Made by a program: the position numbers and the translations under genes | Notes under the pieces: model-generated | The model's database searches: none | What the model saw: the letters and a program-made list of their open reading frames with translations, nothing else | What the model was told of the DNA's origin: nothing | Assembly: GCA_946965045.2 (NCBI GenBank) | Contig: OX337236.1 | Location: forward strand, 868,001 to 932,000 | DNA: 64,000 nucleotides | Source of the DNA: Epithemia pelagica | Taxonomy: Eukaryota; Protista; Bacillariophyta | Direction: 5' to 3' | Shown here: positions 8,838 to 51,171 of the stretch, in pieces | How the letters are laid out: every line of letters starts with the position of its first letter | Numbering within the stretch: position 1 is the first letter of the stretch

Positions 8838-11443
8838 TTGTGGCTACGAGATTCTGGAGACAAATTTTCCTGATCCACCGTGTATCTGTTGGTGATTGCC
8901 CGTAGATCTCCAGCACTTTCATCTCACAGCGAAAATATTACGTGGCCTCATCAATAAGCTTCACCAAATGCCATACTCTGGCTTGATTCACAATCAAGAT
9001 GGTTTGGGTGAATTCTTTGCATTCTGTCGACTGAAAGCTTTGCCGGTTCTGAAAGCACATTAGCAATCCACTCCCTCTCCCTATGTTCCAAAGTTGGCTC
9101 TGATTGAGAGACTCTGTGATTTTTCAATCGGATGATAATTGACTGTGAGGACACCTCCTGTCCTTTCCTCTCATGCTGAAGCAATACGCTGCCACCAAAC
9201 CCATGGCTGGACACCGAAGACCATCCCGAGACATGATCCACAAGAGGTTAGCTTCCCTAAAGTAAGTCGTTAACTGATAGGTCCGCCACTTCTCAATAAT
9301 CCAAACCTGGCAAGAGGTTAAGTAGCCTGGTGGTAAGTTGCTCCTGAGTATACTCAAAACGTTCATGCCCCATCAGATCCTTGACAGCATGGCATAGTTT
9401 GCTAGCTTCCAGTAGGAGACCACATCGAAGGAGTGCTAGAATGGTGTCCACATAAGACTGTAGGTTACCTTCAATATTGTCCAGTGTCAGCTGATCTCGT
9501 AGTTGAATGCTCTTCATGTGCACCTCAGCTTTTCTCATCGATTCTTTATCGTCAGCTTCTCGAAAATTTTTCAACGCTCGCGTCAAATTCTTTAGGCTAT
9601 CCCCTAGATTCGCACTACTCTCAGCTGCAATGGCAAATTTTAGTCCATTCTTCGTCCACTGTTCCATTGTCATCACATTTGCTTCGACGTTGGACAGGTT
9701 TATCGAATCGATTAAACGTGTGTCTTTTTCACGACAAACATACGCCCATTTCTTGAAGGCATCAAAGGCAACGGAATCTCCAGTTTCGGCAAAAATAAGC
9801 CGTTTACAACAACGAGTAACTGCCGTATACAGCTGTTTGAGTTGGGTTTCCAGCTCTGGTGCACAGAATTGGATGTCTGATTTGTAATCTTCCAGGAACA
9901 GCTTTCTCCAAAAGCGTTGGTTTTCATTGGTCAAGTCCTGGAAAAAGTCAACAATCAACACGACATCGAACTCCAAACCTTTGGATTTGCGAATACTAAG
10001 GACAGACGCCGTCTCACCAAACAAACCCTGTAGCTGACTAATCTTAGTGTCATCCATAGAGAGGACGGCCACTCCCTGAAGTTTTTCAACCAGTTCCTTG
10101 AGTTCTTCCCATGACAAATTGGACAGAACGCAAGGTCGTTGGCCTCGAAAGAAACCTTCATCCCGGGGGAGTTCCTTGAACGAACCGGGGAAAGCTGAGA
10201 ACATATTATCCAGGATTCCCGCGGCTAGGTTAAGGACTCCGGCGTGGCTCCGAAAATTGACCTTGAGCATTTTTGGCTTTTCAGGTATCTTTCTGTTTTT
10301 CCCGGAACTGTTGTGGTCGTTCCTGTTGTACAACGTATCTGCCACTATACGAACATCTTCGAACCTGAAATCTATACCCTCTTCAACAGACTGTGCAGGG
10401 TCACCAGCCATAAACAATCCCCCTGGATTGCAAAGAGAGAAAAACAAGGCTATCTCGGCTTGTGTGTAGTCCTGGACTTCGTCCACGTAGAGACGGTTTT
10501 GAAACAGGTTCGAATCTGTGTCGAAATAACGGAGATCTCGTCTTGTCAACACATTCAGGATCCGAGCCACCCTGTTGTTATCGTCCCAAAAGTTGTTTTC
10601 ACGGCAGATCTGTTCGTACCTCTCGAAAATATCGTACGATACTTCACGCTGCTCAAGATTCAAGCGACACTGTCGTGAACCAAGACTCGTGTATTCATCC
10701 CTTGTTAGAGAGCGCCCCTTGCTCACTGCAACAATGGATCCTTTGATAAACGATCTGATTTGAGTCCACGAGACAAGAGCATCCAGCCCATCACTCTCCT
10801 TGTGAACATGTGATTTGAATTTATGGAAATCCATTCGAAGCCTTTCCAAATAGCTGGACCCCACAGTGAGTTCTTCTTCGCATGTTGACAATAGCTTTCT
10901 GTACGTCCAGTAGTCCAAAGACCCACTTTCGTTCTCCAAGCTTTCACCCACAGATTCTTTCACGTACTTGCATATACGTCGTGATCGAGCAACAAAGAGT
11001 TGAGAAAAGGCCAAACTTCCTTCATACTTGTGGCGGTCATTGTGAATGCGCGATGCAATGCAAACGGTTTTTCCTGTTCCGGATCTCCCAAGAACGCAAA
11101 CAGAACCTTCAGACTCAGCAATTTCTTTTTCCTTTGGTGTCATGTACATTGGTGGCCGCCATGTGTTGTGGTTTAAGTTACCCACAAAAGAGGCACCGAC
11201 TTCGTAGAGTTTGAGAGGCAGGTCTGCTTTCGGATCCAGCATTACTTCACCCGTGTCATAATGAAGGTTTTCAACCAGGACATCCGTCACAGGAACTAAC
11301 TGGCGCTTGCTTCGTTTTCCAGCGTCGTCAATCAGACCCATATAGCGAGACACTTTCTTGTGTGCGGCGACGTACCATATGAGAAGTGTTTCATTGGGTC
11401 TCGTCCAAAGAATTCGTTGCCCCGATTTTTGGAGGGGAGTGAA

Positions 11444-11482
11444 ATGACAGACTTTCATGACAGACTTTCATGACAGACTTTC
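11444..11482 (+). repeat. 13-bp unit ATGACAGACTTTC x3 in the left TIR
   Basis: Exact copies at 11444, 11457 and 11470. Confidence 0.95.
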
Positions 11483-12518
11483 GGATAAACTTTCAACTTT
11501 AGAGGGAATTTCGGCCCAACGAGATTCAATCCATACATTTTCCCAAAGTAAAAAACTAAGATGAATTGCCCCTCATCCCTCACATGTACCGACCGATCAA
11601 TGAGATGATCAATCTCAAGATATGCAAACTATCCTCACACACACCATGGCGAGGAGGCTCTAACACAACAGCAATCAACCCGCCTCCTCTACTTGTATGA
11701 ACATGACTAATTGAGTGAGAGCATGTACTAGTTACCTTTGTACATACTTGTATGTGTCATACTCGTAGGCAATCGTTTCGTCCATCCATCCTCGTTCACC
11801 ATCCTGTCTTTTGCCTGCATCGATCCATTTGTCTTTGTCTTTGTTTATTGTTGTTTCACCATCCAGTAAGACACTCCTTCTTCCACTCGAACTGTGTTAT
11901 CGGAAGCAGCCGAATGGTGCTGTTGCCGTGCCGTCGTCGCCGATTGTTTTGCCGTTCGGCAGAAACGAGGAGTTGATTGTTGAGTATGTTGTTCTTGTGG
12001 TTGTAGCCGCATGTTGTTGTTGTCGCTGTCGTTGTTGTAGCCGCATGTTGTTGTTGTCGCTGTCGTTGTCGACGCTTTCTGTCTTGTCGCATGTCGTTGC
12101 TGCAGTCGCCGCATGTCGTTGTTGCTTCTTGTTGTCATTGACGGGCACAGTCTCGTGCACTGGGTTCGGTGACAGCGAGTAGTTGATTGTTGCGTGCGGG
12201 TTGTTTTTGTTGTTGTTGCCGAGTGTTGTCATTGTTCGTTGTTCGTTGGCAGCAAGTAGTTGGTAGGTGATTGTTTGCTGCTCCCTTGGTGTGGTTGGTT
12301 CCATCATTGTTGGGTCCAAACGAGCAGTCTGATTACGGGAAATCAAGACTAAAAGGCAATAGTGTCTCTATCATGTGTAGATATGATGCCATATGTTCGG
12401 AGTTGGTTGGGAACATTTTTTTGTATTGTAAATAAAAGATGCTACAAAAATAAAAAGTTTTCCCGAATGTCTGTCAAAAAGCTACCTGAAACTCCGAATG
12501 TCTGTCAAACAACTACCC

Positions 12519-12642
12519 CGAAAGTCTGTCATTTCACTTTTTCAGGCCTGAATAGCGAAATGACAGACATTCGGGTAAACCGAAAGTCTGTCATTTCACT
12601 TTTTCAGGCCTGAATAGCGAAATGACAGACATTCGGGTAAAC
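12519..12642 (+). repeat. 62-bp tandem duplication made of internal TIR-TIR junctions centred on the palindrome TTCAGGCCTGAA
   Basis: CGAAAGTCTGTCATTTCACTTTTTCAGGCCTGAATAGCGAAATGACAGACATTCGGGTAAAC occurs at 12519 and 12581. Confidence 0.95.
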
Positions 12643-13684
12643 ATTCGTTTTTAGAGTTAGGGTTAAACCGGGTATCGTTGTCATGAACTTGAAGTGGCAC
12701 TGACGAGACAAAAAGGGCTATAGTAAAATGCCATTTTATTTAAATGAAGAGTGCATGTGGAAGAGCAGCAGCGACATGGAGTGCAACCGGATAGTCTGTC
12801 CGTATAACAGCCAACATTTTGAAAGTTTATCCGAAAGTCTGTCATTTCGCTATTCCCCGATTTTTGTTCCAAGTAGGTTTCATAAATTTTTGTGTTAGAT
12901 CCTTTCAAAAGTTTTGCAGTGGTGAAACCCCAGTCACCTTGTGCCAGCTTCTCTATCTTCTTTATGAAAAGCTCCTTGAACTTGGAATCTGCTTCTTTCA
13001 GCCATTTGAGAACTTCTTTTGTGAGCTTGATGCTTCCGTATGCTGAAGGGTTCGTCACAGGGACAACGTTTTCTTCGATAACAACGTCTTCAATGCCATC
13101 CGCATTCAGTTCAACTTCATCATCATTCTCTGTGACGTCGTCGTCTTGGCCTGTCTTCCTTGCCGCCGCTTCAGTAGCCCGCAGCAGCCTCGAGGCAGTG
13201 TGTGCCTTAAGCTCTCCCTCCTCATCGTCACTTTCATCGCCTCCAGATAGCTCGAATCTTATTTGGATAATACTCCACGTTTTCGGGGCCTCACTAAATT
13301 CCTCAGTTTTGGTGTACTCCAAGATTTCTCCCCAAGTCCTCAGGAATTCATCTTCCAACATTCTCAATTCATCTCTACGATTGATTTGGTCCAACAAACG
13401 TTCAGCATGTGAGGTATTCTTTTGCACGTGAAATGAATCCCATGGATCTTCCAAGAGTGAGCCTTTGAGACATTGTGAACGAGCTTCCTCTAGATATCCT
13501 TGTTGTTCCAGAATTCTAGCGTACTCCAAATGAACACCTCTGGCATTGGGTTTCTTTGAGAGAATACTTTTAGCATCTTCACGAGCACCTGTCACATCAC
13601 CACATGCTGCTTTGCATCGTATAATTCCACACATCACCTCAAGCCAGTGGTCCTCTTCCTGGAGCGTCCCTTCATTCAACGTAT

Positions 13685-14452
13685 ACTTAATGTATGTAGA
13701 AAACTAACGTAAGACGTGATGGTTAGTGCTCTGAACTTCTGTAGTCAACCAGTTCACTCGGTACACGATGGGGCCCTCACCTTGCACTAGGTTAGTATGG
13801 TTGACTCCTTCCTAAAGGTTGCTTACAACTTTCAGGTTTTTATAAGAAGTGAGCTTATTCTATCGAAAGTGTTTGTTTCTCATGATTGCTCTTTCATTAC
13901 TTCCTTTCAGTCATAAAGAGTTTACTTTTCCCGAATCGTTGGGCCCGGTGAAGAAACATCTTTGACTTCTAGGTAAGGCGCTACAGACGCTCTACGTTTA
14001 GGGACTAATGGAACCTGTTCTCTTAGTGCATAGAACCTGTTCCATATACTCAAACTGTGAGGGATAGAGGCGGAACTATTGGCTTGAACCAAGTATCCAT
14101 GATCCTTTGGTGAATCTTGTTGTAAGTTGGAGACGTGTATGTTTTAGGTGAGACATAGCCTGGACTTTGCTTCCGAGTGGAGCTCGTCCGGCTTTTGCCT
14201 GTCGTAGATAGTAGTGGGCATATGTAAATGTGTATCACAAAACACCAGGGTTATTCAGAGAGGGAACATTGTGCCGCAGGCTCGGACATGTCACATACAT
14301 GGGCACAGCTTCGTCAGCCGTCCACGCACGTGTTCGCACAAGCTTGCAGGACAGATGGCACAGCTATGTCATGGTAGACGCGTACTCTCATAGAGTCTAG
14401 GTGTTGTTCTTCGAAAGGTAGTTCTAGGTCTATAGCTAGCCGTACTTTAACT
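13685..14452 (-). repeat. 3' LTR (768 bp)
   Basis: Matches 23414-24181 at offset 9729; I saw no differences by eye. On the element strand it reads AGTTAA...TTAAGT. Confidence 0.95.
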
Positions 14453-14461
14453 CTCCCTCTC
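14453..14461 (-). other. polypurine tract GAGAGGGAG
   Basis: Purine run directly 5' of the 3' LTR on the element strand. Confidence 0.8.
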
Positions 14462-14501
14462 ATGGAGTGATTGGGGAATTACGACATGCCGTAGACTCAG
14501 T

Positions 14502-17500
14502 TTACCATCCTTGATTGAGCTTACGGCACTTTTCGAAGAGTTCCCGAGTTTGGCACTTGGTGAAATAATCTGCCCTTTGTTCCTCGGTTCCTACCATGCT
14601 TACCTTCACTCCGCCTGGATGATCACCTACATGTTCCCAGAAGAAGTGTAAGTACGTGTTGAAGTGTTTTGTCCTAGGTGTCAATCTTTGCTTAGTTGCA
14701 AGATAGAAGGCACCTGTATTGTCTTCAAATACTTCAGAGAAGATGGTCGGCTTCTCAAATGGCAGGTCTAGGTTTGCTAGAAGTTCCTCTATCACGCGTC
14801 TTGTAGCTATCACACTTCGCATGGCTTGGGAGAGAGCGTGGTACTCGGCTTGGAGGGTACTTAGTGCAACTGATGATTGTAGCTGCGACCGCCAAATAAG
14901 AGGACACCCACAAAAGCTAAGAATGTAACCAGTCCTGGACTTAGCACTTACTGGGTTGTCTTGAGGCTCCCTTCCATGTAGTCCTGCGAAATCGGCATCT
15001 ACATAGCAATCTAGCTTGAAATCTTTAGTTGGCGTAAAGATGGTTCCTTTATCCTTGGTGCGTGCTAGATAGCGCACTATAGTTTTCACTGCTGCCGCAT
15101 GTGATTTCTTCGGATTAGAGTTGAATCGTGCTACTTGGCTCACAGCGAAGGCTATATCTGGTCGGGTGTTAGTTGCAAGGTACAGTAACATTCCCACGAT
15201 AGAGCTGTATTGCCATTTCTCTTTCATGGGTTCCCCATCAGGATCGCTTCCCAATGCTAATTGTGTAGCAGGGGTCCAATTCGGGTTGCAGTCCTGCATA
15301 TTGGTAGCGTCAATTACCTTGTTGATAAGTCCCTTTTGAGTCATGGTGATCGAATTGGTCTTTTCATCTCGGACAAAGTTGATCCCCAAATAATTGGTGA
15401 AATTTCCTTCTTTTTCCAGTGATAAGCCCTTTTTCTTCAATCGTTCAACTAGTTCGTCAATTAAGGTAATTGTAGGTGCGCACACTCCACAGTCGTCTAC
15501 CCATAGAAAGATGATTATGTTTTCCTTGTACAGTAAACATTGGTCGTGTTTACTCATTTGGAATCCGTCTTCCTTGAGGGCCTGTATTAGGTGGTCATAC
15601 CATAGTCTAGGTGCCGATGACAATCCATAGAGGCTTTTGACCAACCTAAGGCATGTAGTTCCTTTTAACGATGATCGAAATCCTCTAGGCAGATGGATCC
15701 ATACGGGTTCATTCAAAGTGGCTTGCACGAAAGCATTATTGAAGTCAATGCATGCAAGTTCCCATCCTAGAATCAGACTGAGGGTGAGTACAATGCGAAT
15801 AGTACTCCAGTTGACTACAGGGGAATAGTTCTCTTGCTCTGACTCCTGGAGGTCACCGCGAACGCAATATCGTGCTTTGAACTTGGAAATTTCTCCGTCA
15901 GGGGTTCTTTTGCGTTTAAACACCCAGGTACCGGGTAAAATTCGCGTAGTTGCTTCACTCTGCTGCACCTCTACCCATGTTCCCTTTTCTTCTAGTTCTC
16001 GGATTTCTTTGCTGGCTGCAGCCTGCCACTTGGTGAGATCCTTATCTCGCATAGCTTCATCATAACTGAGGGTGTCAGGATCTGATAAGGAAGCTTTCAT
16101 CATGGAGAGAAGGTCACTAGACTGGACAGAGGCTGGGAAACTACATAGGTCTTGTACATAGCGTTTGGGCGGTCGAATAGTTCGTCCGGAACGCCTAGAC
16201 ACCATAGTTGGACCAGGTGTGGGAGCTGGAGTAGGGATGCGAGGCGATTGTGGTGGCTCCCTCTGAGGAGTGGAGGGCTCGAAAGAAGGGGGTGCAGGCA
16301 AAGAAGGGGTCATAGGAGAAGGTTGCTCTGCGATAGTAGGTAGTTTGGTAGGGGTGGTACGGACTGTTTCCCTCTGAGAAAGGGGCGTCGATGGAGAAAG
16401 AGGGGTTACTCCCTCTGACAACGGCACCGGTTTCTCGCCTGGAGCAGAGCCAGGAGTATTAAGAGGGTAGATACCAGGAGAGTTAGAATGACTAGGGAGG
16501 ACGGAAGGGGGGTCGTGAGTCTCAATAGATCGAGTTACAGTGGTCTGTTTGTTGCCAAAGTCGGAATAATGTAGAACATCATGTGGAGCTGGAGACTCAT
16601 AGTCTAGATCATCATCGTCCTCAATGTATTGGTAGTGTGAGTCACCAAAAAGTCGGTCCCATTCGTGACTGGTAAGGTCAGGAAGGTCTTCAACGGAGGT
16701 GGCAATTGTACTAAACCAGTCGTCGAAGACAACGTGGAATTGAGGGGTAATATACCCCGTATTGGGGTTGAGTACCAGTGGTACAGTTGTAGCATGACGG
16801 GTACTTAGGCCCATGAGAATTCCTCGCGTGGAGCGGGGCTTCCATCGTGGAAGCTTCTTACCGTCAGCCATGGCTTTGTCCAATACATAGACGGGACAAC
16901 CCCACACATGTAAGTCATGGAATTTCCGCTGCTCCCATCTTGTTCGTGTAAACAAGTCATGGGGACTTATGCCCGTGTCGAGGCTTGGGACATGGTTACT
17001 TAAGAAAGTTGCATGTGCGACTGCCATTGGCCATAGAGAAGGATCAGCCATTTCGGGCCATTGTATGGCCGCGTGTAGCATCATCGTTCTTGCTATAGAC
17101 ATAATGGTTTGTATTGCTCGTTCGGCTATACCGGCATGGTGATGTGCCCCAACTCCCGCAAATCGATAAGTTTGTGCAAAATTTTGTAGGGACTCCGTAT
17201 ATTTAGCCGATGTAAAGGCAGAGCCATTGTCAGTTAGGTACTGTAGGGGCACAACTCCCACATCTCTACAGAAAAGTTCGAATGAGTCTTTTACTCGTAG
17301 GGTCTCATGGGTGTTTAGATGACTCTGGAACCCAATCCAGGTGTACCCCGAAGCGTGGTCTACAAAGATTGCGCCGCCCATGTACAGGTCGGAAGATTTT
17401 GACTTGTCTCGGGATGTAAATAAGCGTCCTTTAGTGGAGCATACAAAGTGATCTACGCTTACACACTGACCAGGGTAAAGATTTCCGGCTTTTGTTATTC

Positions 17501-20500
17501 CCCGTCTGTCTTTTACAATGGAACTCAAGGTTCCAGGTGATGGACGTCTCTTTTGTTTTCCATATTGACACGCTGCACAAAGAGGTAAGTCGGTGAGTGA
17601 TGCTGCTTTTGTGTGCAAACGGCGCTGTTGCTCAGTTTTTGCGAGAATTCCAGTTCTCATAATGAACTGGATTCGACGAAACGATAGGTGCCCAAGGCGA
17701 AGATGCCAACGTACCAGTTCCTTCTGTGTCTCACTAAGATTCTTGTTTTGTTCTGATGTTTCGTTGACGATTGTGTTGAGAGCATGCGAACTCTTGGTTA
17801 CTTCCTCATGGTTGTAACCGTACGACATTGGGAGATTGTTTTGCGGATTCACAACGACAGTGACTTGTGTTCGTGTTGTGTCTTCAGGTAAACCGGTGAG
17901 TACCAATGTTTTACCGTCTTGCACAATCTTTTCTCCGTCATACGTCTGAAGCAAACTCTGTGTCGATAACAGTCTGACACTTGTCTTGGGTACCAGGAAA
18001 GCAGGAATTCGAAGTTGTCGGATGTTTCCAGAAGAATCAAGGATGCTCCACAAGACCTCTCCGCGGCCAATCGCTTTCATGCGATTGGCGATGCCTTTCA
18101 CCTTGAAGTTTGGTAGTGGTTCGATCTTGCCCACGAAGTCTTTTTCGTTGTTGGTGATGGAGATGCTGGCGCCACTATCCCAGATGATGGGATAAGACGC
18201 GTCATTCGGCATTGCGCTCCTCAAGGCCATTGGATCCTGAAGGCACGCTTCCAAGCCAGCAGGAGTGATGTACCTCCATGAGTCGTAGTTGCGTGTGTTC
18301 CCCAAGACTTGAAAGGCGTTGAGGGAGCGGAGTTCCTCAAGGTATGCAGTCAAACCAAAGACTTGTCTTGGGGTTGATGACTGTCGGTTGCTCCTCAAGG
18401 CTTCACTTCGAGTGGGTGAGTGGTTATCGGTGTTTCTGTTACGACGATTGGGCGTCGTGAACGAGGTTCGGTTGTTGTAATGGAAGCGCTGGTAGCTATT
18501 CGTGGGAATCACAGAGCTGCGGGTTCCCATGGGTGGATTAAACCTGGTACGTGCTGAGTTGTTGTTGTTGTTGTACGGAGTTGCGCGACGACGGAGAGGG
18601 ATTGGTCGCGGCATCCGTTGTCGCATACGCGCTCGTTTGTGTGCCGGTGAAGAAGTCACGGATCGAAACGACGGCTTTCGCTTGACACGAGGGTGATTCA
18701 AAGGGAATGCAGTGTTCTTCCTTCTTTTCGGACGGGTACTGACTGGTGCACACGGAGGAGCAGCGTGAGTGGACCCAAAAGAGTCCAGATGCAACAACTT
18801 ACAAAACGACCCAACAATCAAACGGATGTAAATGAGCGGGAAACGGCGGCTCATGGCATAGGCCAGTCCATTGCTCACCACACTCCACAATCCACCAGAT
18901 GATAAGGTAGAAGAGGGCGGAGGTACCGGATGGAGAGTGGCACGGAAATGGTGGACGGAAGGTGTCGATGTGGAGTTGAACAAAGGAGAAGGATGGCCTG
19001 TCACGGGTGAAATGGTCTTGGGAAGCAAGATCAAAACAACAATCCAGCAGGAAAGCCAAGAAAAGAAGGCAGGTTGGCATGATGGATGGGCCAAAACGCT
19101 CCAGAGCAAAGCCCATAGTCCATAAAATAAAGTCTTGGTTCCCATCCAGTAGTAGCCAAAGCTAGACATGAGAGAGGCCATTCCGTCTGTGAAGACTGTA
19201 GTTGCATAGGTGGAGGGTTGGGGTGATGGCAGAAGATAGAGGACACTGGGTACCACCACAACCAACGTGATGAAGCTAGCACGTAACATGTGACGGCTCA
19301 GGGATCTTGAGTCAACAGTAGTGTCGACAGGCGCGGGAGCGCGTGGCGGAGTCACGTAAGGGCGACCACGGCGGGTTGACTCGGTGTATGACATGTCAAA
19401 GGCAGCCATATAAACCTTCGCGTGGTCATCTGTAGGATAGGACCTGTCTTGGTCAACAGTCACGGTAGAGATGGAGTCATTAGAAGAGACTCGATCGGGA
19501 GTGACCGTAAGACAGGGGCGATCCAAGTTGTACCACGGTGGTGAAATTGGTCCACATTTCGTCAGTTCATAGGCTACATCATGTACGAGACTCAATCCCG
19601 CATGTTCGTAGGGCGATCCTGGTGTTTGTTCGCACTCAAGAATAAAATACCACATGTCGCGAATCATGCGACGGGTATTTTGAATCCGAAGAGTCAAAAG
19701 ATCTTTGAGTCCCGGGTCAGCTGCATGGGAATACTCAGCATACAAAAACCATAAGTGGTCGGCCGCACTTGTGATCAGCTCATCCATGGTGTCAGGATGG
19801 CGAGCCAGTTCGGCTTCATTTTCTGCAGCATCGTCTCCTTGCAAGTTTGTGGTGTCGTCGAGATCCACCATGGCAGCACAGGCATAGTATTTTGCAAATG
19901 GATTTTCGCTGCGCTTTTTGGTCCTAGAGTCGTCGTCGGTTTCGCTGGTATCTGTTGGTACGTACAGTGCACCAAGTTGACTGTTGTCGACGAAAGAGGT
20001 GGATGAGACAGATTCATCAGCCATGTTCTCCAAGGTCTCACACGCTGTGCTTCTTGAATGTAGATCGACGGGCGGTGGATCGGAAATATTCACGGGAGAA
20101 GGCGTGGCGTTACTCTGATTCAAGAACGAGACAAATTGATCATATTTCTGGTCAATGGGTCGGTGCTCCATGATTCGAGAGCGAAGAAGGCAAGGAAGAG
20201 GAGTTGAGTGCACACTCATCTCGGGCCAGACGGGAGCTGGATTCGGATGGTTCGGGATTCTGGTTCCATCAATGAACCATCCCACGAACCATTCTTCGTC
20301 CTTGACTCGCTGGTAGGCGACAGCCACGGTAAGTTCTGGTTCTTGGTGTCGAAGAGCGTACACCGTGTACTGTGCCCTTTCGTACCTCATTCCGTCTCTT
20401 TTTGCTGTGTTGGCTTCTTGCTCGATGGAGATGCGTGGATCACGTGGACGTGGCCGAGGTACAAAACCTCGAGTCCACTGCTCGAGAGCTTCAGTGGCAG

Positions 20501-23153
20501 GAGTCGGGAATTGGTCATGGCGCAATGGCGTCGGGTTCGTCACCGGTGAGATCTCGGGTCGCCGAAGAGCTGGCGGCTTCGAGTCGTCCAGGAGTCCTTC
20601 TTGCAGGTTCTTGAGGTGGGTAAGGTCGCTGCTGTTGTCATGGCTGATAAGCGATCCTTCTTGTGTATCCATGGTTGTGTCCAAACCACCAGCATTCTCA
20701 TCACTATCCTGTTCGTCCTCCTGCTTGATCTTGGTGCTGTCGAAGCTTTTGTCGTGCACAGCTGCGTTGGCTTCAACGCTAGAGAAGGTACGTTGGTCTG
20801 TGGGACTGTGGTCACTGCCGTACCACATATCGATGTCGTCCCACCTGTCGAAGTACAGTGTCTTGGCATGCGATCCACTCAACTTTCCCTTTTTCATTTC
20901 TTGTTCTTCTTCCTTGTTACTTGCCGAACTCGGTAAGTCTTTGTTTGCCACAACCACAACTGGTGTGAGTTTTTGTGCCACAAGTGGTGGCATATCAGCA
21001 TACTCATCTTCGTTGTCTTCACTTTCAGTGGAGCTGTCATCGTCCTTGTGAGGTCGACAGATCGAGACTGTTGCATTATTTGTGCTTGTTTTCTTTTCTT
21101 TTGTTTCTGTGTTGCAAGTGCATGGTTCATTGTCATCATCCTTGTGGTCGCTATCGTTGTGATTGGTGGCGGTTGGTTCATTGTTGTTGGGTGACAGGAT
21201 GCGGCGCAATTCGTCAAACGGAATAGGCGGTGTCCGGTCAGTGTCATCATCGTCGTTTCCAGAGTTGGTGGAACTGCAGTCCATGGACGAGCTGTCATCG
21301 GATGGTGACATGTCCCAAATGGTGAAGAAGACGTAGTGGTCGACGGTGTCCTTGCAACAATCAACCGAATCGCAACAATCATCATCATCATTCATCAGAG
21401 CTTCGCAACAATCCATAGAGGCAAGGGACATACAGTCGGGTAAAGCAGCGACGGGCAAGGCAGGAGGATCAAGTTGGTCGAGATCGAATTCGGTCTGCCA
21501 AGCGGATACTTCGAGTTCAAGTTTCTTCGCATGGGTGGCATTCCGAGGTTTTGCTTTGTCCTTGTCGCCAGGAGACTTTTTATACCCAACAATATGGTTT
21601 GCCGTGGTGTGAGAGGTGTTCCAACGGGTACAAACACCACACCAGAACCACCGCTGACCCTGGATCGTCTGCTGCTCAGGTGCACCAGGAGCAGGAGGGA
21701 TCTTCTTCCAAGGGTGAGCCTGCGATCGATCAACGCGAGTGTTGTTACGCTTGTGAATCGGCTTTCCCTTCCTGTCGCGGTGATTGGAGCCAGGCTGGGT
21801 GTTTGGTCCATTGCTTGGAGTCGGATTGGAACCCGGCGGGTTTCGAAGTGTCTGAATGAGTGCATTAAGACTAGCTTGAGTCATAATAGAATGCCGTTTC
21901 TTCTTAGTCTTCGAAACGGTAGCCTTGTTAGCGGTGAACGACGAGGGGACGGATTTAGAATCAGGAGAACTTCGTTTAGGTGACCATTCACCTTCCTTGA
22001 CACAGATTAGGTACTTCTTGTTCGCCTCTTCGATAACATCTGTGTACAAAAGACGCTCTTTCTTCATATGACTGTCTCCGATAGAGCGATCTAGAAACCG
22101 AATATGGATAATACCGTCATTGACAGGCTTGTTCAGAGTAAGTAGGTCGAACTTAGGCGTGTCAGGCCATTCAGTCTTGAGGATGTTAGCTAGGAGGTTC
22201 CCAGTCAGAGTGTGGTCGTACTGTCCAGCTGCGATCAACGGTCGCGCTTTTTCCGAAAAATCTTTAGTCAACGCCATAATATCGTGGCCAGGGTACTTGT
22301 GAGGCACAAGAGCTCGCATCTCGTGCTTCACTTGTTCCCAGTGCTGCGGGGAATCATGTGTCACGATGGTGACAAGGACCATGAAGAGCTCGGGGAAGCA
22401 CGTCACTTCCCGACTCTGGTCCTCAACTTCGTGCCTAAAGGACTTTTCCAAACAGTCCAGTAAGTAGTCCTGGGCACTGACGTCGTTGTTTCTGTCGTAC
22501 TTGTCATAACTCACAATCTGCGTCTTCATCAATTCCTTCACCTTGCTCATCGTATATTTTGGGTGCTCGATTACAATGAACAACATGTCTTTGGGATCAT
22601 GAGGATTGGGGAGGTATGCGATCGAGTCCATGCCGTGTTTAATCAAGTGCTGCTTGATTTCATCCTGGAGACGGCTAAAATCACCGGTCTTTTTGCTGTA
22701 CTTTTCGTCAGGCCCGGAGATACGATCGTAGTATTTCTTGTCTGTCAGGGTACGTATCTGCATCGTTCGCAGTGGTTCTGTCGCCTTTACCTCTAACCCA
22801 TCCCACTTGTACGTGGGTTTTCCTCCAGTCCAGGCCACCCATTCGTCCTTCTTGCTTCGGACCAGTCCGCCAATCTTCGGCGGGTCGGGGCGGTAATCGA
22901 TACCGGGTGGAGGAGTAGGAGTCTCGTCACTCATGGTGGTCTTCCTTCTTTGTCGTTGAGATGCAACAATCAAACCCTGATGTTGGGTGTCGTTGTTAGA
23001 TGGACCTGGTGGAGACTCAACAATCTGCGATTCCGAAGCAGCAATACTCTGTCCTTGTTCGTCAACAAGGGCGTCTTCGTTCGTCGGATTGGCTACAGGT
23101 GTTGGAAGATCAACGGTACTGGATACGGTGTCTTTGTCACCTGGTATGGACAC
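14502..23153 (-). CDS. copia Gag-Pol polyprotein with a ~1,000-aa extra region (2,883 codons from GTG; first ATG at 22934 gives 2,810 aa)
   Basis: Gag Cys/His motif WFWCGVCTRWNTSH (~21610-21650); protease IWDSGAS (DSGA at 18168-18179); integrase HLRLGH..CAAC, SVDH, YLTDNGSAF and GIAERAI; RT WVFKRKR, KARYCVRG, LYGLSSAPRLW and WVDD; RNase H YVDADFAG, QAEY, EDN and QRADYFTK. Confidence 0.95.
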   Translation of the reverse strand: MSIPGDKDTVSSTVDLPTPVANPTNEDALVDEQGQSIAASESQIVESPPGPSNNDTQHQGLIVASQRQRRKTTMSDETPTPPPGIDYRPDPPKIGGLVRSKKDEWVAWTGGKPTYKWDGLEVKATEPLRTMQIRTLTDKKYYDRISGPDEKYSKKTGDFSRLQDEIKQHLIKHGMDSIAYLPNPHDPKDMLFIVIEHPKYTMSKVKELMKTQIVSYDKYDRNNDVSAQDYLLDCLEKSFRHEVEDQSREVTCFPELFMVLVTIVTHDSPQHWEQVKHEMRALVPHKYPGHDIMALTKDFSEKARPLIAAGQYDHTLTGNLLANILKTEWPDTPKFDLLTLNKPVNDGIIHIRFLDRSIGDSHMKKERLLYTDVIEEANKKYLICVKEGEWSPKRSSPDSKSVPSSFTANKATVSKTKKKRHSIMTQASLNALIQTLRNPPGSNPTPSNGPNTQPGSNHRDRKGKPIHKRNNTRVDRSQAHPWKKIPPAPGAPEQQTIQGQRWFWCGVCTRWNTSHTTANHIVGYKKSPGDKDKAKPRNATHAKKLELEVSAWQTEFDLDQLDPPALPVAALPDCMSLASMDCCEALMNDDDDCCDSVDCCKDTVDHYVFFTIWDMSPSDDSSSMDCSSTNSGNDDDDTDRTPPIPFDELRRILSPNNNEPTATNHNDSDHKDDDNEPCTCNTETKEKKTSTNNATVSICRPHKDDDSSTESEDNEDEYADMPPLVAQKLTPVVVVANKDLPSSASNKEEEQEMKKGKLSGSHAKTLYFDRWDDIDMWYGSDHSPTDQRTFSSVEANAAVHDKSFDSTKIKQEDEQDSDENAGGLDTTMDTQEGSLISHDNSSDLTHLKNLQEGLLDDSKPPALRRPEISPVTNPTPLRHDQFPTPATEALEQWTRGFVPRPRPRDPRISIEQEANTAKRDGMRYERAQYTVYALRHQEPELTVAVAYQRVKDEEWFVGWFIDGTRIPNHPNPAPVWPEMSVHSTPLPCLLRSRIMEHRPIDQKYDQFVSFLNQSNATPSPVNISDPPPVDLHSRSTACETLENMADESVSSTSFVDNSQLGALYVPTDTSETDDDSRTKKRSENPFAKYYACAAMVDLDDTTNLQGDDAAENEAELARHPDTMDELITSAADHLWFLYAEYSHAADPGLKDLLTLRIQNTRRMIRDMWYFILECEQTPGSPYEHAGLSLVHDVAYELTKCGPISPPWYNLDRPCLTVTPDRVSSNDSISTVTVDQDRSYPTDDHAKVYMAAFDMSYTESTRRGRPYVTPPRAPAPVDTTVDSRSLSRHMLRASFITLVVVVPSVLYLLPSPQPSTYATTVFTDGMASLMSSFGYYWMGTKTLFYGLWALLWSVLAHPSCQPAFFSWLSCWIVVLILLPKTISPVTGHPSPLFNSTSTPSVHHFRATLHPVPPPSSTLSSGGLWSVVSNGLAYAMSRRFPLIYIRLIVGSFCKLLHLDSFGSTHAAPPCAPVSTRPKRRKNTAFPLNHPRVKRKPSFRSVTSSPAHKRARMRQRMPRPIPLRRRATPYNNNNNSARTRFNPPMGTRSSVIPTNSYQRFHYNNRTSFTTPNRRNRNTDNHSPTRSEALRSNRQSSTPRQVFGLTAYLEELRSLNAFQVLGNTRNYDSWRYITPAGLEACLQDPMALRSAMPNDASYPIIWDSGASISITNNEKDFVGKIEPLPNFKVKGIANRMKAIGRGEVLWSILDSSGNIRQLRIPAFLVPKTSVRLLSTQSLLQTYDGEKIVQDGKTLVLTGLPEDTTRTQVTVVVNPQNNLPMSYGYNHEEVTKSSHALNTIVNETSEQNKNLSETQKELVRWHLRLGHLSFRRIQFIMRTGILAKTEQQRRLHTKAASLTDLPLCAACQYGKQKRRPSPGTLSSIVKDRRGITKAGNLYPGQCVSVDHFVCSTKGRLFTSRDKSKSSDLYMGGAIFVDHASGYTWIGFQSHLNTHETLRVKDSFELFCRDVGVVPLQYLTDNGSAFTSAKYTESLQNFAQTYRFAGVGAHHHAGIAERAIQTIMSIARTMMLHAAIQWPEMADPSLWPMAVAHATFLSNHVPSLDTGISPHDLFTRTRWEQRKFHDLHVWGCPVYVLDKAMADGKKLPRWKPRSTRGILMGLSTRHATTVPLVLNPNTGYITPQFHVVFDDWFSTIATSVEDLPDLTSHEWDRLFGDSHYQYIEDDDDLDYESPAPHDVLHYSDFGNKQTTVTRSIETHDPPSVLPSHSNSPGIYPLNTPGSAPGEKPVPLSEGVTPLSPSTPLSQRETVRTTPTKLPTIAEQPSPMTPSLPAPPSFEPSTPQREPPQSPRIPTPAPTPGPTMVSRRSGRTIRPPKRYVQDLCSFPASVQSSDLLSMMKASLSDPDTLSYDEAMRDKDLTKWQAAASKEIRELEEKGTWVEVQQSEATTRILPGTWVFKRKRTPDGEISKFKARYCVRGDLQESEQENYSPVVNWSTIRIVLTLSLILGWELACIDFNNAFVQATLNEPVWIHLPRGFRSSLKGTTCLRLVKSLYGLSSAPRLWYDHLIQALKEDGFQMSKHDQCLLYKENIIIFLWVDDCGVCAPTITLIDELVERLKKKGLSLEKEGNFTNYLGINFVRDEKTNSITMTQKGLINKVIDATNMQDCNPNWTPATQLALGSDPDGEPMKEKWQYSSIVGMLLYLATNTRPDIAFAVSQVARFNSNPKKSHAAAVKTIVRYLARTKDKGTIFTPTKDFKLDCYVDADFAGLHGREPQDNPVSAKSRTGYILSFCGCPLIWRSQLQSSVALSTLQAEYHALSQAMRSVIATRRVIEELLANLDLPFEKPTIFSEVFEDNTGAFYLATKQRLTPRTKHFNTYLHFFWEHVGDHPGGVKVSMVGTEEQRADYFTKCQTRELFEKCRKLNQGW

Positions 23154-23400
23154 GAGGTCGAAGCTTCCTGCACCACTGGAAGTTGGTGAGTCCTCGTCGC
23201 TCGTGTTGGTACCTTGGTTGGAGCCTTGATGGCTTCCGGCGCGCTTGGTTGGATGCTAGTGGGTCGATAACCACGTAGCAATGGAGATTTGTCGTTCCCT
23301 TCCTGATGAACACAATAATTCACACTGAAGAGAGGTTGGTTCGGTCCGTCGGTCTTGTCGGCAATACGATAGAGGAGGCGTACGGTTCGTCAGCCTCTTT

Positions 23401-23413
23401 GGGCTCAATAACC
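23401..23413 (-). other. primer-binding site GGTTATTGAGCCC (half-tRNA iMet type with one extra base)
   Basis: Starts immediately after the 5' LTR. It is complementary to the initiator-tRNA anticodon arm GGGCUCAUAACC except for one inserted T. Confidence 0.65.
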
Positions 23414-24181
23414 ACTTAATGTATGTAGAAAACTAACGTAAGACGTGATGGTTAGTGCTCTGAACTTCTGTAGTCAACCAGTTCACTCGGTACACGATGG
23501 GGCCCTCACCTTGCACTAGGTTAGTATGGTTGACTCCTTCCTAAAGGTTGCTTACAACTTTCAGGTTTTTATAAGAAGTGAGCTTATTCTATCGAAAGTG
23601 TTTGTTTCTCATGATTGCTCTTTCATTACTTCCTTTCAGTCATAAAGAGTTTACTTTTCCCGAATCGTTGGGCCCGGTGAAGAAACATCTTTGACTTCTA
23701 GGTAAGGCGCTACAGACGCTCTACGTTTAGGGACTAATGGAACCTGTTCTCTTAGTGCATAGAACCTGTTCCATATACTCAAACTGTGAGGGATAGAGGC
23801 GGAACTATTGGCTTGAACCAAGTATCCATGATCCTTTGGTGAATCTTGTTGTAAGTTGGAGACGTGTATGTTTTAGGTGAGACATAGCCTGGACTTTGCT
23901 TCCGAGTGGAGCTCGTCCGGCTTTTGCCTGTCGTAGATAGTAGTGGGCATATGTAAATGTGTATCACAAAACACCAGGGTTATTCAGAGAGGGAACATTG
24001 TGCCGCAGGCTCGGACATGTCACATACATGGGCACAGCTTCGTCAGCCGTCCACGCACGTGTTCGCACAAGCTTGCAGGACAGATGGCACAGCTATGTCA
24101 TGGTAGACGCGTACTCTCATAGAGTCTAGGTGTTGTTCTTCGAAAGGTAGTTCTAGGTCTATAGCTAGCCGTACTTTAACT
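23414..24181 (-). repeat. 5' LTR (768 bp)
   Basis: Direct repeat of 13685-14452. A candidate TATAAAA lies on the element strand near 23566-23573. Confidence 0.95.
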
Positions 24182-25287
24182 CGTATCGACAGCTCGACGG
24201 TAATAATTTAGAGCCAAGGTCCACTTTTCAAGGCCTTCCAGGGCTGCCCCCATCCTCCGATAGGGTTCCACAATGAGCATTCGATTATTGCCAACCTCAG
24301 TTGTATTTGCTTTTGTTGTGCTGTATGTAATCATCTCTAACAGAACCTCCTCTGCAGTGTCGAATGTCTGAAGCCTCAGGTACATGTCGGCCAGTAGCAG
24401 GTATCCCTCAAACAACTTCCTTTCGTTGGTCTGGGTAGATTTTTCGAGGGATGGGAGTGCCTTTAAGTAAGTGATAGCATCACGAATGTAGACATCTTTT
24501 CTCTCGCTAGGAATCGATGGATGATCGGAATTCTCGACACACTGCCGGGCATGGTTGACTATGAGTTCTTCAAAACACTTTGTCAGCTGTTGTCGACACG
24601 AAGGACATCGTCCAAAAGGCGTTCGACCACGGGAGCCCAAGATTTTAGACTGGAGTGATTTCACACATTGCAGGCACATACGTTCTTGACATGGCTCCAG
24701 AACGATTGGATGCAAAACATGCCCCGAACGTTTGTTGGGACAAGTGGTCAGAGCACAAGCGACACTGGCATCGAACCGATGAAACGATTGTGGATATCCT
24801 TCGCCTAAAACATGTTGTGCTTTCTCTTCGAAAGAAAAACATTGAGCTTTATGTCTATTCAAATAGTCATCTTTCTGACATCTGAGGAAGAGTTTTGTAA
24901 GTTGCCATTGCCAAGGTAATCGACTCATAATCCATTTCTTGAGACTCACTTTGAGGAACAGTAGAAAGCATTTCGACAGCGGGAGCACTGGAACTGTGGA
25001 TCTTCCTTCCCACATAATTCACATCGTCTGATCAATGACATGGTTACGGTTCAGGAACCGGCTAAATATACAGCCATCGTCGGGATCAGATGCCACGGCG
25101 CCAGAAAACTACCTCTGCTACTAGCTAGAGTAGAGAGGAGGCCTCAATAGACTACCCCAACTATAGACTACCCCGATTGATACTTCTCCTATTGAGAGCG
25201 GGTACCGACTCCTCCGCCTACAACGAACGATGAGTTCCTAGATCGCAGATGGATTTCATGATTTCTTATTCAGCTCGTGTAGATCAA

Positions 25288-49500: not shown

Positions 49501-51171
49501 GGTCGTCCCAGAGGTCGTGGTCGTGGTGGGTGCATCGGGGGCCAAAATACTTCTCTGACTACTGGAGGTATTGGCATTGCGAATGATATCTCGCATCCGA
49601 TTAATGTTTCGAATCAACTCATCGTAGTCAGCTTGCAATAAGGATTCTTTTGAACATCCGACAACTCGATCAGTCAGTTTCATATCATCATCTTCGTCAA
49701 TAGTTTCCAAATCCAAATTCGATTGCCAATTCATGGGTTGGAAAGCCAAACTAGACATGGCCCCCTCGTCACCCTCATGGATGGTGATCGAGTTCACTGT
49801 TGTATGTCCTTCTTCTTCTTGTTCGCCTTGTTCTTGTGGCTCGTCCAAATCCGGGCCATTGAGGGGAATGGTCGTAAAGGGTGCTGTCGCAGCACCATCA
49901 TCATTTTCGTTCTCCCAAACAGGTACACCATTGTGAGACTTGAGGGTGGTGGTAGTGGCCGTCGTGGTTGCCGATCCCGGTGCGAGTGGTTCATGTTGTG
50001 TGGCTACTTCATTGGTGAGTACCTCCAGTCCATTGTCGGCACAAAAATCTCCAAAATTCTCGACATTGTGTCCGGTAAAGTACAGGATATCGCCGACATT
50101 AAGGACAAAGTCTTGCGAGACGGCCCGATGGACATTGCCCGTGGCGGCACGATGGACACTGACCAAATAAATACCACCGGTATCGCGCAATCCCGATCGT
50201 TGGACGGTCCGATTGACTGCGGGAGACCATTGGGTCAAGCGAGCTCCCAACAAGAGTTCATCGGCTTCGGCGGCGGCATCGACAGTGTCGTTCCCACCGG
50301 GCAGTAAAAAGGGAGAAGCAATCAAAATGTAGGCTACACCCGCCATGGCAACGGGGACACCAAACTGTCCCAAATCAAACAAACCAATGCTCACGGGTTC
50401 TTCGTCTTGTGTCGTACCGTCGTCATTGTTGTTGTTGTTACCACTGTATCGTTCCTCCAACAATCCAGTAACCACCAAGTTGGTGCTGGTTCCAATCAAG
50501 GTACAGGTACCACCCAAAATACTGGCAAAACTGAGTGGAATGAGTAATTGTTGTGGCGATTGACGTATATTTTTGGCCCATCGTTGAACAATGGGGATCA
50601 TGACAACCACGACGGGTGTATTGTTCAAAAAGGCAGACACGAGGGCAATGGGGATCATCAATCGCAATTGTGCCGATGCCAAATTTTTGGGATGTCCCAG
50701 CAATTTTTGCATGTACCAATCCAAGGCACCTGTTTTGCCAATGCCTTCTGCCACGACAAACAGAATCATGACGGCCCACAAACCTTCATTGGCAAACCCC
50801 TCCAATCCTTCTTTGACCGATATAATTTGGGACGCCAAAAAGGCCGTCAACGATGCCAACATGATGGAATCGGCTCCAAAACGATCCGAAATCAAGGCGA
50901 GAAACATGAAACACAAGACCAGCGATGTAAAGGCAATCTCCCATGGTTCATTGTCACCATCATCTTCTTCTTCGTCGTCATCGTTACTGTTCAACCATCG
51001 GCGCACAAAGGTTGGCATACGACCCAAACTTGTCGTTGTTGCCGTTTCACACGGACAGTACGGATAGTTCAAGAAGGACTCTTGCATGAGTGGATCCGTG
51101 GGATACTCGTAGGAATCATAGTTGTCTGTTTCGCTATGGCCCCTCTCAAATTCTAGTTCAACCGGTTCCAT
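46513..51171 (-). CDS. SLC13/CitMHS-type anion transporter (SLT/SAC1-like putative Na+/sulfate cotransporter) with four TrkA-C (RCK_C) domains and an ACT-like domain (1,552 aa)
   Basis: [47 protein letters not shown] and [30 protein letters not shown]. Four TrkA-C-like segments (e.g. [29 protein letters not shown]). The substrate is inferred only. Confidence 0.88.
   Translation of the reverse strand: [1552 protein letters not shown]

What the first reader, a model, noticed from the sequence alone, without database searches (positions are those of the whole stretch)
9293..25015. Hidden 1,261-aa RING-TPR-RelE-like-UvrD helicase gene reassembled across two transposon insertions
Seen: three separately called ORFs (24176-25015, 12681-13679, 9293-11458) fuse exactly in frame once each element and one TSD copy are removed (..RRAVDT|LNEGT..; ..YLEQKS|GQRILW..). 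The product carries an N-terminal RING-like finger (with Glu where His is expected, PCQERMC), TPR-like helices, an acidic linker, a RelE-like domain and a complete SF1 helicase with TRANK1-like motifs. Inference: a ubiquitin ligase, scaffold, ribosome-dependent RNase and helicase in one chain suggests an innate-defence or translation-surveillance effector. I do not recognise this architecture as described for diatoms.
Basis: partly seen in the sequence, partly recalled or inferred. Interest (0 to 1): 0.85.

Follow-up and report, generated by a model that had tools for sequence, protein, structure and literature searches.

The report
Transposon-broken TRANK1-like helicase gene
A diatom gene for a large helicase carrying a bacterial-toxin-like RNase fold has been cut into three pieces by two transposon insertions; an intact copy exists in a related diatom, and the same RNase-like module appears in the uncharacterised vertebrate gene TRANK1.

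Summary
Three minus-strand ORFs are one gene, split by a 10.5-kb Ty1/copia LTR retrotransposon (identical 768-bp LTRs, 5-bp target duplication) and by a 1.43-kb non-autonomous inverted-repeat element. Both joins are exactly in frame.

The decisive evidence is an intact, syntenic orthologue in Epithemia clementina (KAL7575582.1, 1254 aa). It is colinear and contiguous with all three pieces and has an intron at the same position.

A 92-nt first exon and a 68-nt intron give a MYND zinc finger, so the product is 1247 aa, not 1261.

Domain calls:
- **MYND:** solid.
- **TPR-like repeats:** modest support.
- **RING-like finger:** motif evidence only. The Glu-for-His is shared with Epithemia.
- **RelE/ParE-fold domain:** strongly supported by an AlphaFold model (pLDDT 92) whose structural matches are nearly all RelE, YoeB, YafQ or HigB.
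- **UvrD-type SF1A helicase:** all motifs intact.

The RelE-like plus helicase core defines a large eukaryotic family that includes vertebrate TRANK1, with invariant Lys, Glu, Arg and His. Function, perhaps RNA surveillance or defence, is inferred and untested. This copy is almost certainly unable to make the full protein.

The parts
24950..25041 (-). Exon 1 (92 nt), holding the true start codon and the first two thirds of the MYND zinc finger
   Evidence: Pfam zf-MYND scores 25.3 bits against a cutoff of 22.7 on this exon alone. The spliced product aligns from residue 3 of the orthologue P0358.
24882..24949 (-). 68-nt GT..AG intron, phase 2
   Evidence: Splicing restores the frame and completes the MYND pattern. 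The E. clementina gene has an 89-nt intron at the same codon and phase. A more distant orthologue, L002, also has an intron here.
24182..24881 (-). Exon 2, first part (to residue 264): end of MYND (to 24839), RING-like finger (24596-24757) and first TPR-like helices (about 24182-24466). It ends at the retrotransposon insertion site.
   Evidence: The pattern C-x4-C-x14-C-x-E-x2-C-x2-C-x18-C-x2-C is present. Pfam RING and TPR hits are weak. Identity to P0358 is 56%.
13685..24181 (-). Ty1/copia-type LTR retrotransposon (10,497 bp) inserted between codons 264 and 265, with LTRs at 13685-14452 and 23414-24181 and a 2883-aa ORF at 14502-23153
   Evidence: The LTRs are 100% identical, and the 5-bp duplication CGTAT lies at 13680-13684 and 24182-24186. 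Pfam finds gag_pre-integrs, rve, SH3_retrovirus and RVT_2 in copia order.
13065..13679 (-). Exon 2, second part: remaining TPR-like helices, a family-conserved W..W motif and an acidic linker (22 Asp/Glu in 75 residues)
   Evidence: Pfam TPR_19 is weak. Identity to P0358 is 62%. The composition is, and the conserved Trp residues across homologues are.
12855..13064 (-). N-terminal half of the RelE/ParE-fold domain (strand 1, helices 1-2, strands 2-3), ending ..IYETYLEQKSG
   Evidence: It aligns to the family profile A1. The fold was established on A1.
11432..12854 (.). Non-autonomous terminal-inverted-repeat DNA element of about 1.43 kb, inserted inside the RelE-fold domain between residues 539 and 540. 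The exact ends are ambiguous within the 12-nt flanking repeat.
   Evidence: A 27-nt perfect inverted repeat lies at 11470-11496 and 12819-12845. A 12-nt direct repeat lies at 11420-11431 and 12855-12866. Six subterminal repeat copies are present. The only sizeable ORF has no Pfam hit.
11285..11419 (-). C-terminal half of the RelE/ParE-fold domain (QRILWT.. strands and the AAHKKVSR helix start), carrying the conserved Arg and His
   Evidence: The window copy keeps 17 of the 20 positions that are at least 90% conserved.
9740..11137 (-). SF1A UvrD-type helicase core
   Evidence: Pfam UvrD-helicase scores 34.5 bits (cutoff 23), UvrD_C_2 31.8 (27.4), AAA_19 29.0 (25.1) and UvrD_C 25.8 (25.6). Motifs I GRSGTGKT, Ia, II VDEVQD, III GDPAQ, V KSKGLEF and VI TRC are present. 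The family profile hits UvrD, PcrA, AddA, FBH1 and GajB in the PDB.
9293..9739 (-). C-terminal helical region conserved in the family, plus the stop codon (9293-9295)
   Evidence: Homologues align to about residue 700 of 708. Identity to P0358 is 73% to the last residue.

Best explanation
**What is shown.** The region is a single nuclear gene of a rhopalodiacean-type diatom. It is the syntenic orthologue of Epithemia clementina ACA910_020154. Two transposon insertions have interrupted it:
- A very young Ty1/copia retrotransposon lies in the TPR-like region.
- A short non-autonomous inverted-repeat element lies inside the RelE-fold domain.

The uninterrupted reading gives a 1247-aa protein, in this order:
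1. MYND zinc finger
2. RING-like finger with Glu in place of the usual His
3. TPR-like repeats
4. Conserved W..W motif and acidic linker
5. RelE/ParE-fold domain
6. UvrD-type SF1A helicase
7. C-terminal helical region

The RelE-fold plus helicase core is the conserved engine of a large eukaryotic family that includes vertebrate TRANK1. N-terminal protein-interaction modules vary among members (ankyrin, TPR, MYND, ubiquitin-like).

**What is inferred.**
- The intact protein is an NTP-driven nucleic-acid translocase coupled to a RelE-type endoribonuclease.
- It is probably aimed at ribosome-bound or otherwise marked RNA, with the N-terminal modules recruiting or regulating it.
- A role in RNA surveillance or antiviral defence fits the family's expansion and variable N-termini.
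- In this window the full-length protein cannot be made, so the copy is a recently inactivated allele or a young pseudogene.
For: **Gene identity and breaks**
- Colinearity with intact P0358 is gap-free at both joins.
- Gene order matches E. clementina: ribosomal L27 gene, this gene, LRR gene on the opposite strand. The intron position is the same.
- Neighbouring genes are 61-65% identical in protein against 56-73% for this gene, so it diverged at the local rate.

**Domains**
- MYND.
- Helicase.
- RelE fold: an AlphaFold model built on 42 homologues has pLDDT 92.2. Foldseek top hits are RelE, YoeB, YafQ, HigB and Cami1, with target-normalised TM-scores of 0.72-0.79 and probability 1.0.
- The only sequence-model hits are RelE-superfamily families: Gp49 in 6 of 42 members and TIGR02683 in 4 of 5.

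**Family**
- The library search found 2408 relatives.
- Vertebrate TRANK1 proteins are hit at about 1e-38 by a diatom member and at 162 bits by the window's own helicase piece.
- Diatom and animal RelE-like profiles align with hhalign probability 98.2% and E 5e-14, with the same Lys, Glu, Arg and His invariant.
- TRANK1 recurs in transcriptome studies of virus-infected or interferon-stimulated bird, reptile and mammalian cells (from titles and abstracts only, not read in full).
Against: - No activity was tested. The RelE-fold domain falls below every curated sequence-model threshold, so it could be a non-catalytic binding module.
- ParE-type members of this fold are not RNases.
- The nearest solved helicases act on DNA, not RNA.
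- The fold was modelled on a homologue (P0004), not on the window's split copy.
- The window copy differs at 3 of 20 conserved positions, although E. clementina shares two of these (the GDWG(F/Y)TT loop); the third, Arg to Lys, is also seen in P0004.
- Whether the transposon-bearing state is fixed or heterozygous is unknown.
Confidence: 0.8

Rival explanations
1. The three ORFs are separate genes, or gene fragments, that only appear to join. The in-frame fusion is a coincidence.
For: Automatic annotation of the source assembly calls them separately. P0001 is the 721-aa ORF, starting at an ATG inside the inverted-repeat element.
Against: An intact 1254-aa orthologue is colinear and gap-free across both joins, with the same flanking genes and the same intron. 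In 30 of 45 relatives the second join is contiguous inside a folded domain. The flanks of both insertions carry target-site duplications.
Confidence: 0.01
2. The insertions are tolerated. They are spliced out as introns (introner-like behaviour), or the assembly shows one haplotype while an uninterrupted allele supplies function, so the organism still makes the full protein.
For: The three pieces carry no other stop or frameshift. The LTRs are identical, so the retrotransposon insertion is very recent and could be heterozygous. Diatoms are diploid (general knowledge).
Against: By my reading of the junction sequences, no GT..AG pair lies at any position that would remove either element exactly. 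The first piece reads two codons into the LTR and then hits a stop. Both protein searches found only the 721-aa fragment from this organism, and no full-length protein near 100% identity.
Confidence: 0.2
3. The RelE-fold domain is not a nuclease. It is a structural or binding module (ribosome, RNA or protein docking, or ParE-like) that regulates a DNA-repair-type UvrD helicase. The protein would then work in genome maintenance rather than in RNA surveillance or defence.
For: The closest solved helicases are DNA enzymes: UvrD, PcrA, AddA and FBH1. The domain is below threshold for all RelE family models. MYND and RING-like fingers are common in chromatin and repair factors (general knowledge).
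Against: Lys, Glu, Arg and His are invariant from diatoms to vertebrates. They sit on the strands and the helix start where, by my own comparison from memory, RelE and YoeB carry their catalytic residues. The best structural matches are RNase-type toxins, with ParE ranking lower.
Confidence: 0.3

Closest known systems
Epithemia clementina hypothetical protein ACA910_020154 (KAL7575582.1, 1254 aa; shorter isoform KAL7575583.1)
   Same: It is the orthologue. It has the same domain order, including the MYND finger, the Glu-containing RING-like finger and the GDWG(F/Y)TT loop. It shares the same flanking genes and intron position. Protein identity is 56-73% by segment.
   Different: It is uninterrupted, spanning 3.85 kb against 15.7 kb here. 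It is annotated only as hypothetical, and no function is known.
TRANK1 (TPR and ankyrin repeat-containing protein 1) of vertebrates, and TRANK1-like proteins of invertebrates, chytrids and algae
   Same: They share a homologous UvrD-type helicase core and a homologous RelE-like module just upstream, with the same invariant Lys, Glu, Arg and His. TPR-type repeats lie N-terminal.
   Different: This protein has no ankyrin repeats, and has MYND and RING-like fingers instead. It is much shorter (1247 against about 2900 aa). Animal proteins carry an insertion of about 25 residues in the RelE-like domain and long inserts in the helicase. It is a paralogous family member, not an orthologue of TRANK1.
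Bacterial type II toxins of the RelE/ParE superfamily (RelE, YoeB, YafQ, HigB/Gp49), and the CARF-RelE effector Cami1
   Same: The fold is the same: strand, two helices, then a three-stranded sheet, with target-normalised TM-scores of 0.72-0.79. Conserved basic and acidic residues lie on the sheet. Cami1 is a precedent for a RelE domain fused to a regulatory domain (PDB 8phb and 8phj among the hits).
   Different: Sequence identity is only 10-19%, and curated family thresholds are not reached. The domain is embedded in a 1247-aa eukaryotic protein with no separate antitoxin. Catalysis is untested.
SF1A helicases UvrD, PcrA and Rep; AddA and RecB; FBH1; Gabija GajB
   Same: Pfam UvrD-helicase and UvrD_C are above threshold, and all canonical motifs are present.
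   Different: A single-sequence search of the PDB finds nothing. Only the family profile reaches these enzymes, at E 1e-14 to 1e-4. The substrate, RNA or DNA, is unknown.

Membership tests
TRANK1-like helicase family | Helicase core significantly similar to bona fide vertebrate TRANK1 | tested here: met
   Window piece C scores 162 bits against Manis javanica TRANK1, and 151-160 bits against elephant, bird and shark TRANK1. A diatom member hits many named TRANK1 proteins at about 1e-38.
TRANK1-like helicase family | Conserved RelE-like module immediately upstream of the Walker A motif | tested here: met
   The diatom profile hits animal TRANK1 at about residues 830-900, with Walker A at about 1070. 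hhalign gives probability 98.2% and E 5e-14.
TRANK1-like helicase family | N-terminal ankyrin repeats (the 'ANK' of the name) | tested here: not met
   There is no Ank hit in the window pieces or in the orthologue, whereas 23 of 49 relatives have them. I therefore file this as a paralogous variant of the family, not as TRANK1 itself.
TRANK1-like helicase family | N-terminal TPR repeats | tested here: inconclusive
   In the window, TPR_14 scores 21.8 bits (cutoff 23.5) and TPR_19 scores 22.1 (cutoff 25). In the orthologue, TPR_14 scores 27.6, above the cutoff.
SF1A UvrD/Rep/PcrA helicases | Family model above the curated threshold, with motifs I, Ia, II, III, V and VI | tested here: met
SF1A UvrD/Rep/PcrA helicases | ATP-dependent translocation or unwinding | not testable with these tools
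   This needs biochemistry.
RelE/ParE (BECR-fold) superfamily | Characteristic fold | tested here: met
   The AlphaFold model of the family alignment has pLDDT 92.2. The top 13 Foldseek PDB hits are all RelE-superfamily toxins, and nearly all of the top 50 belong to that superfamily or to the RelE-fusion Cami1. It was modelled on an intact homologue, and the window copy retains 17 of 20 conserved positions.
RelE/ParE (BECR-fold) superfamily | Sequence-model membership at curated thresholds | tested here: not met
   The only hits are below threshold: Pfam Gp49 (best 1.6e-4, 6 of 42 members), ParE_like (2 of 42) and NCBIfam TIGR02683 (15-19 bits against a cutoff of 62.85). The PDB profile search finds nothing.
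RelE/ParE (BECR-fold) superfamily | Catalytic residues and RNA cleavage | tested here: inconclusive
   Lys, Glu, Arg and His are invariant across diatoms and animals. Their equivalence to the YoeB or RelE active site is inferred from position in the fold, not from a residue-level superposition. Activity is untested.
RING finger (C3HC4) E3 ligases | Eight zinc ligands in cross-brace spacing | tested here: inconclusive
   Eight positions are present, but the first pair is C-x4-C rather than C-x2-C, and Glu replaces His. Both features are shared with E. clementina. A more distant orthologue (L002) has the canonical C-x2-C and His.
RING finger (C3HC4) E3 ligases | Family model above threshold, or a confident fold | tested here: not met
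   The best Pfam RING hit scores 18 bits against a cutoff of 50, and the others are weaker. The AlphaFold model has pLDDT 46 and is unusable.
zf-MYND | Family model above threshold and the C4-C2HC ligand pattern | tested here: met
   The score is 25.3 bits on exon 1 alone and 29.8 bits in the orthologue, against a cutoff of 22.7. The full ligand pattern appears after splicing.
Ty1/copia LTR retrotransposon | Two LTRs, a 5-bp target duplication, and integrase upstream of an RVT_2 reverse transcriptase | tested here: met
Class II terminal-inverted-repeat transposon, non-autonomous | Inverted terminal repeats, flanking direct duplication and no transposase | tested here: met
   The superfamily is not assigned, because the duplication length is ambiguous (8-12 bp).

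The most novel reading that the evidence does not exclude
The RelE-fold module is a catalytically active, ribosome- or RNA-directed endonuclease that the attached helicase drives. This nuclease-helicase engine, conserved from diatoms to the vertebrate gene TRANK1 (known in the literature searched here mainly from association and expression studies), would be a previously undescribed eukaryotic RNA-surveillance or antiviral effector of bacterial toxin ancestry. In the searchable literature I found no paper linking TRANK1 to RelE or UvrD. An annotation pipeline had already labelled one relative as a toxin-antitoxin component.
Probability: 0.3. Interest if true: 0.8.

Novelty: new variant of a known kind. 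Interest (0 to 1): 0.5.

Why it matters
**For this genome.** The finding corrects the annotation. Separately called ORFs, including a 721-aa 'gene' that starts inside a transposon, are really one 1247-aa gene knocked out by two mobile elements. One of those elements is young enough to be active.

**More broadly.** The locus led to a family-wide observation. The conserved core of TRANK1-type proteins is a RelE-fold domain joined to a UvrD-type helicase, with the same four polar residues invariant from diatoms to mammals. TRANK1's function is unknown. A predicted nuclease next to its motor gives a concrete and cheap hypothesis to test.

The diatom expansion with swapped N-terminal modules (ankyrin, TPR, MYND, ubiquitin-like) looks like the diversification seen in conflict or immunity genes. 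It offers small, intron-poor versions that are suitable for biochemistry.

Tried and rejected
- **Paralogue check.** The other 721-aa ORF in the window (31453-33618) is not a paralogue. It is a FAN1-like VRR_NUC gene.
- **PDB sequence searches.** Neither the helicase piece alone nor the RelE-like profile found anything. Only the helicase family profile did.
- **RING-like structure.** The prediction from a three-sequence alignment gave pLDDT 46, so no fold search was run on it.
- **More orthologues.** A metagenome scan for further MYND-RING orthologues returned only the species already in hand.
- **Prokaryotic relatives.** A scan of bacterial genomes with the RelE-like alignment could not be launched, because no sufficiently conserved stretch was found. 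Prokaryotic relatives of the fused core were therefore not examined.
- **Introns instead of transposons.** I rejected reading the insertions as introns. By my reading of the junction sequences, no GT..AG pair sits at a position that restores the reading frame exactly.
- **dN/dS.** A comparison with E. clementina was not attempted, because at 56-73% protein identity synonymous sites would be saturated.
- **Literature.** Searches for TRANK1 with RelE, UvrD or RNase found nothing mechanistic. Three reviews of RelE or BECR domains mention neither TRANK1 nor UvrD-type helicases (two contain no 'helicase' at all), and a HEPN survey adds nothing relevant.
- **One failed call.** One search failed on a frame error of mine and was repeated.

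Full report
**1. The observation**

A 10,497-bp element (13685-24181) lies between the first two.
- Its 768-bp LTRs are 100% identical.
- It is flanked by the 5-bp duplication CGTAT.
- Its single 2883-aa ORF carries gag-pre-integrase, integrase core and RVT_2 in the Ty1/copia order.

An element of about 1.43 kb (about 11432-12854) lies between the second and third ORFs.
- A perfect 27-nt inverted repeat sits near its ends.
- It has six copies of an 18-nt subterminal repeat, where none is expected by chance.
- It has no transposase.
- A 12-nt direct repeat flanks it.

Read across each insertion, with the element and one copy of the duplication left out, the frame is continuous..RRAVDT|LNEGT.. 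and ..YLEQKSG|QRILW...

**2. Proof that it is one gene**

A search of 1.8 billion representative proteins with the helicase piece gave 2408 relatives. In 30 of 45 of those with both parts, the end of piece B and the start of piece C are contiguous without a gap.

The closest relative is Epithemia clementina ACA910_020154. Its longer isoform, KAL7575582.1, is 1254 aa. The three pieces align to it colinearly and contiguously:

| Window piece | Residues | Orthologue residues | Identity |
|---|---|---|---|
| A (spliced) | 4-264 | 3-264 | 56% |
| B | 12-275 | 277-546 | 62% |
| C | 2-708 | 548-1254 | 73% |

The orthologous locus has the same neighbours: a ribosomal L27 gene upstream on the same strand and an LRR gene downstream on the opposite strand. 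The gene there spans 3.85 kb, uninterrupted. The neighbours are 61-65% identical in protein, so this gene diverged at the local rate.

**3. Correction of the N-terminus**

Upstream, 25041-24950 encodes MSLIRRCELCGK..YCSSK, followed by a 68-nt GT..AG intron (24949-24882). Splicing completes a MYND zinc finger.
- Pfam zf-MYND passes its threshold on exon 1 alone (25.3 against 22.7 bits).
- It also passes in the orthologue (29.8 bits).
- The annotated E. clementina gene has an 89-nt intron at the same codon and phase.
- A more distant orthologue, L002, also has an intron at this place.

The product is 264 + 275 + 708 = 1247 aa, and the breaks lie after residues 264 and 539.

**4. Domain calls**

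*Helicase.* Pfam UvrD-helicase, UvrD_C, UvrD_C_2 and AAA_19 are all above threshold. Motifs I, Ia, II, III, V and VI are intact. The family profile reaches UvrD, PcrA, AddA, UvrD1, FBH1, GajB, Rep and RecB in the PDB.

*RelE-like domain.* I aligned the 124-residue region from 42 intact homologues.
- AlphaFold gave pLDDT 92.2, with a strand, two helices, a sheet and a helix.
- The top 13 Foldseek PDB hits were all RelE, YoeB or YafQ-type toxins. Nearly all of the top 50 belonged to the RelE/ParE superfamily or to the RelE-fusion Cami1. Target-normalised TM-scores of the top hits were 0.72-0.79 and probability 1.0.
- Sequence models give only sub-threshold hits, all to that superfamily.
- The window copy, although split, keeps 17 of the 20 positions that are at least 90% conserved. 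E. clementina shares two of the three differences (the GDWG(F/Y)TT loop), and the third, Arg to Lys, is also seen in P0004.

*TPR.* Support is weak in the window and above threshold in the orthologue.

*Acidic linker.* It has 22 Asp/Glu in 75 residues.

*RING-like finger.* The eight ligand positions are present as C-x4-C..C-x-E..C-x2-C..C-x2-C. The same variant occurs in E. clementina, and a canonical C-x2-C..C-x-H occurs in the more distant L002 species. Pfam hits are well below threshold and the structure model is unusable. I call this domain RING-like and unproven.

**5. The family**
- Seminavis members are annotated as TRANK1.
- A diatom member retrieves dozens of named vertebrate and invertebrate TRANK1 proteins at about 1e-38.
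- The window's own helicase piece scores about 150-160 bits against them.
- The RelE-like profile finds animal TRANK1 at about residues 830-900, upstream of the Walker A motif at about 1070.
- Profile-profile comparison gives probability 98.2% and E 5e-14, with the same Lys, Glu, Arg and His invariant in both groups.
- N-terminal regions vary widely: ankyrin in 23 of 49, plus TPR, IQ, ubiquitin-like and HSP70. MYND occurs in several other diatom members.
- The MYND plus RING-like combination was seen only in this gene, its Epithemia orthologue and the L002 species.

**6. How it probably works**

Shown: a folded RelE-type domain sits directly before an intact SF1A motor, and both are conserved across eukaryotes together with a fixed set of polar residues.

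Inferred:
- The motor loads onto or remodels a nucleic acid, and the RelE-like domain cuts RNA, possibly on the ribosome as bacterial RelE does.
- MYND, the RING-like finger and TPR act as docking or regulatory modules.
- The acidic linker might mask the basic face of the nuclease, as an antitoxin would. This is speculation.
- The family's expansion and its swapped N-termini fit a surveillance or defence role. So does the recurrence of TRANK1 in transcriptome studies of virus-infected or interferon-stimulated cells (from titles and abstracts only).

I put the gene-structure part at well above 0.9 and the mechanism at about 0.3-0.4. The main rival is that the RelE-like domain is a non-catalytic module on a DNA-repair-type helicase.

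**7. State of this copy**
- Piece A runs two codons into the LTR and stops.
- Piece B runs 57 codons into the second element and stops.
- The annotated 721-aa protein starts at an ATG inside that element.
- By my reading of the junction sequences, no canonical splice sites allow exact removal of either element.

The full protein cannot be made from this allele. The identical LTRs and the otherwise clean frame show that the disruption is recent. Whether an intact allele survives is not testable here.

**8. Novelty**

The gene itself is a new variant of a known but uncharacterised family, and its intact orthologue is already in GenBank as a hypothetical protein. The family-wide RelE-fold observation was not found in the searchable literature. 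However, one relative carries an automatic toxin-antitoxin label, so I do not claim priority.

Noticed in passing
window 14502-23153 (-): The copia-type element encodes a single 2883-aa ORF, roughly double the size I would expect for a Ty1/copia gag-pol (from general knowledge). Its first 1700 residues or so have no Pfam hit and include a long hydrophobic stretch.
   Followed up: partly
window ~39083-44538 (-): Three large overlapping or adjacent ORFs lie in a region of strong GC skew like that of the copia element. One has a weak RVT_1 hit. This is probably a second, degraded retroelement.
   Followed up: partly
window 9293-11458 (-): The source assembly's gene call (P0001, 721 aa) begins at an ATG inside the terminal repeat of the inserted DNA element. 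Its first 8 residues or so are therefore transposon-derived.
   Followed up: yes
window 31453-36335 (-); L002:1-1517: A FAN1-like VRR_NUC nuclease gene lies upstream on the same strand, both here and in the more distant L002 species. This is partial conserved gene order beyond the immediate neighbours.
   Followed up: partly
window 13065-13382 (-), and alignment A2: A short motif with two nearly invariant Trp residues, followed by an acidic linker, precedes the RelE-like domain across the family. The conserved core therefore starts about 170 residues before the second break.
   Followed up: partly
P0230, P0236, P0235, P0245 (vertebrate TRANK1), about residues 780-965: Vertebrate TRANK1 carries the same RelE-like module, with an insertion of about 25 residues between strands and the same invariant Lys, Glu, Arg and His.
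   Followed up: yes
window 46513-51171 (-); 57448-59490 (-): There is a 1552-aa ORF combining citrate-transporter (CitMHS) and TrkA_C domains, and a 680-aa protein made of helicase-associated (HA) domain repeats. These are ordinary diatom genes and are unrelated to the finding.
   Followed up: no
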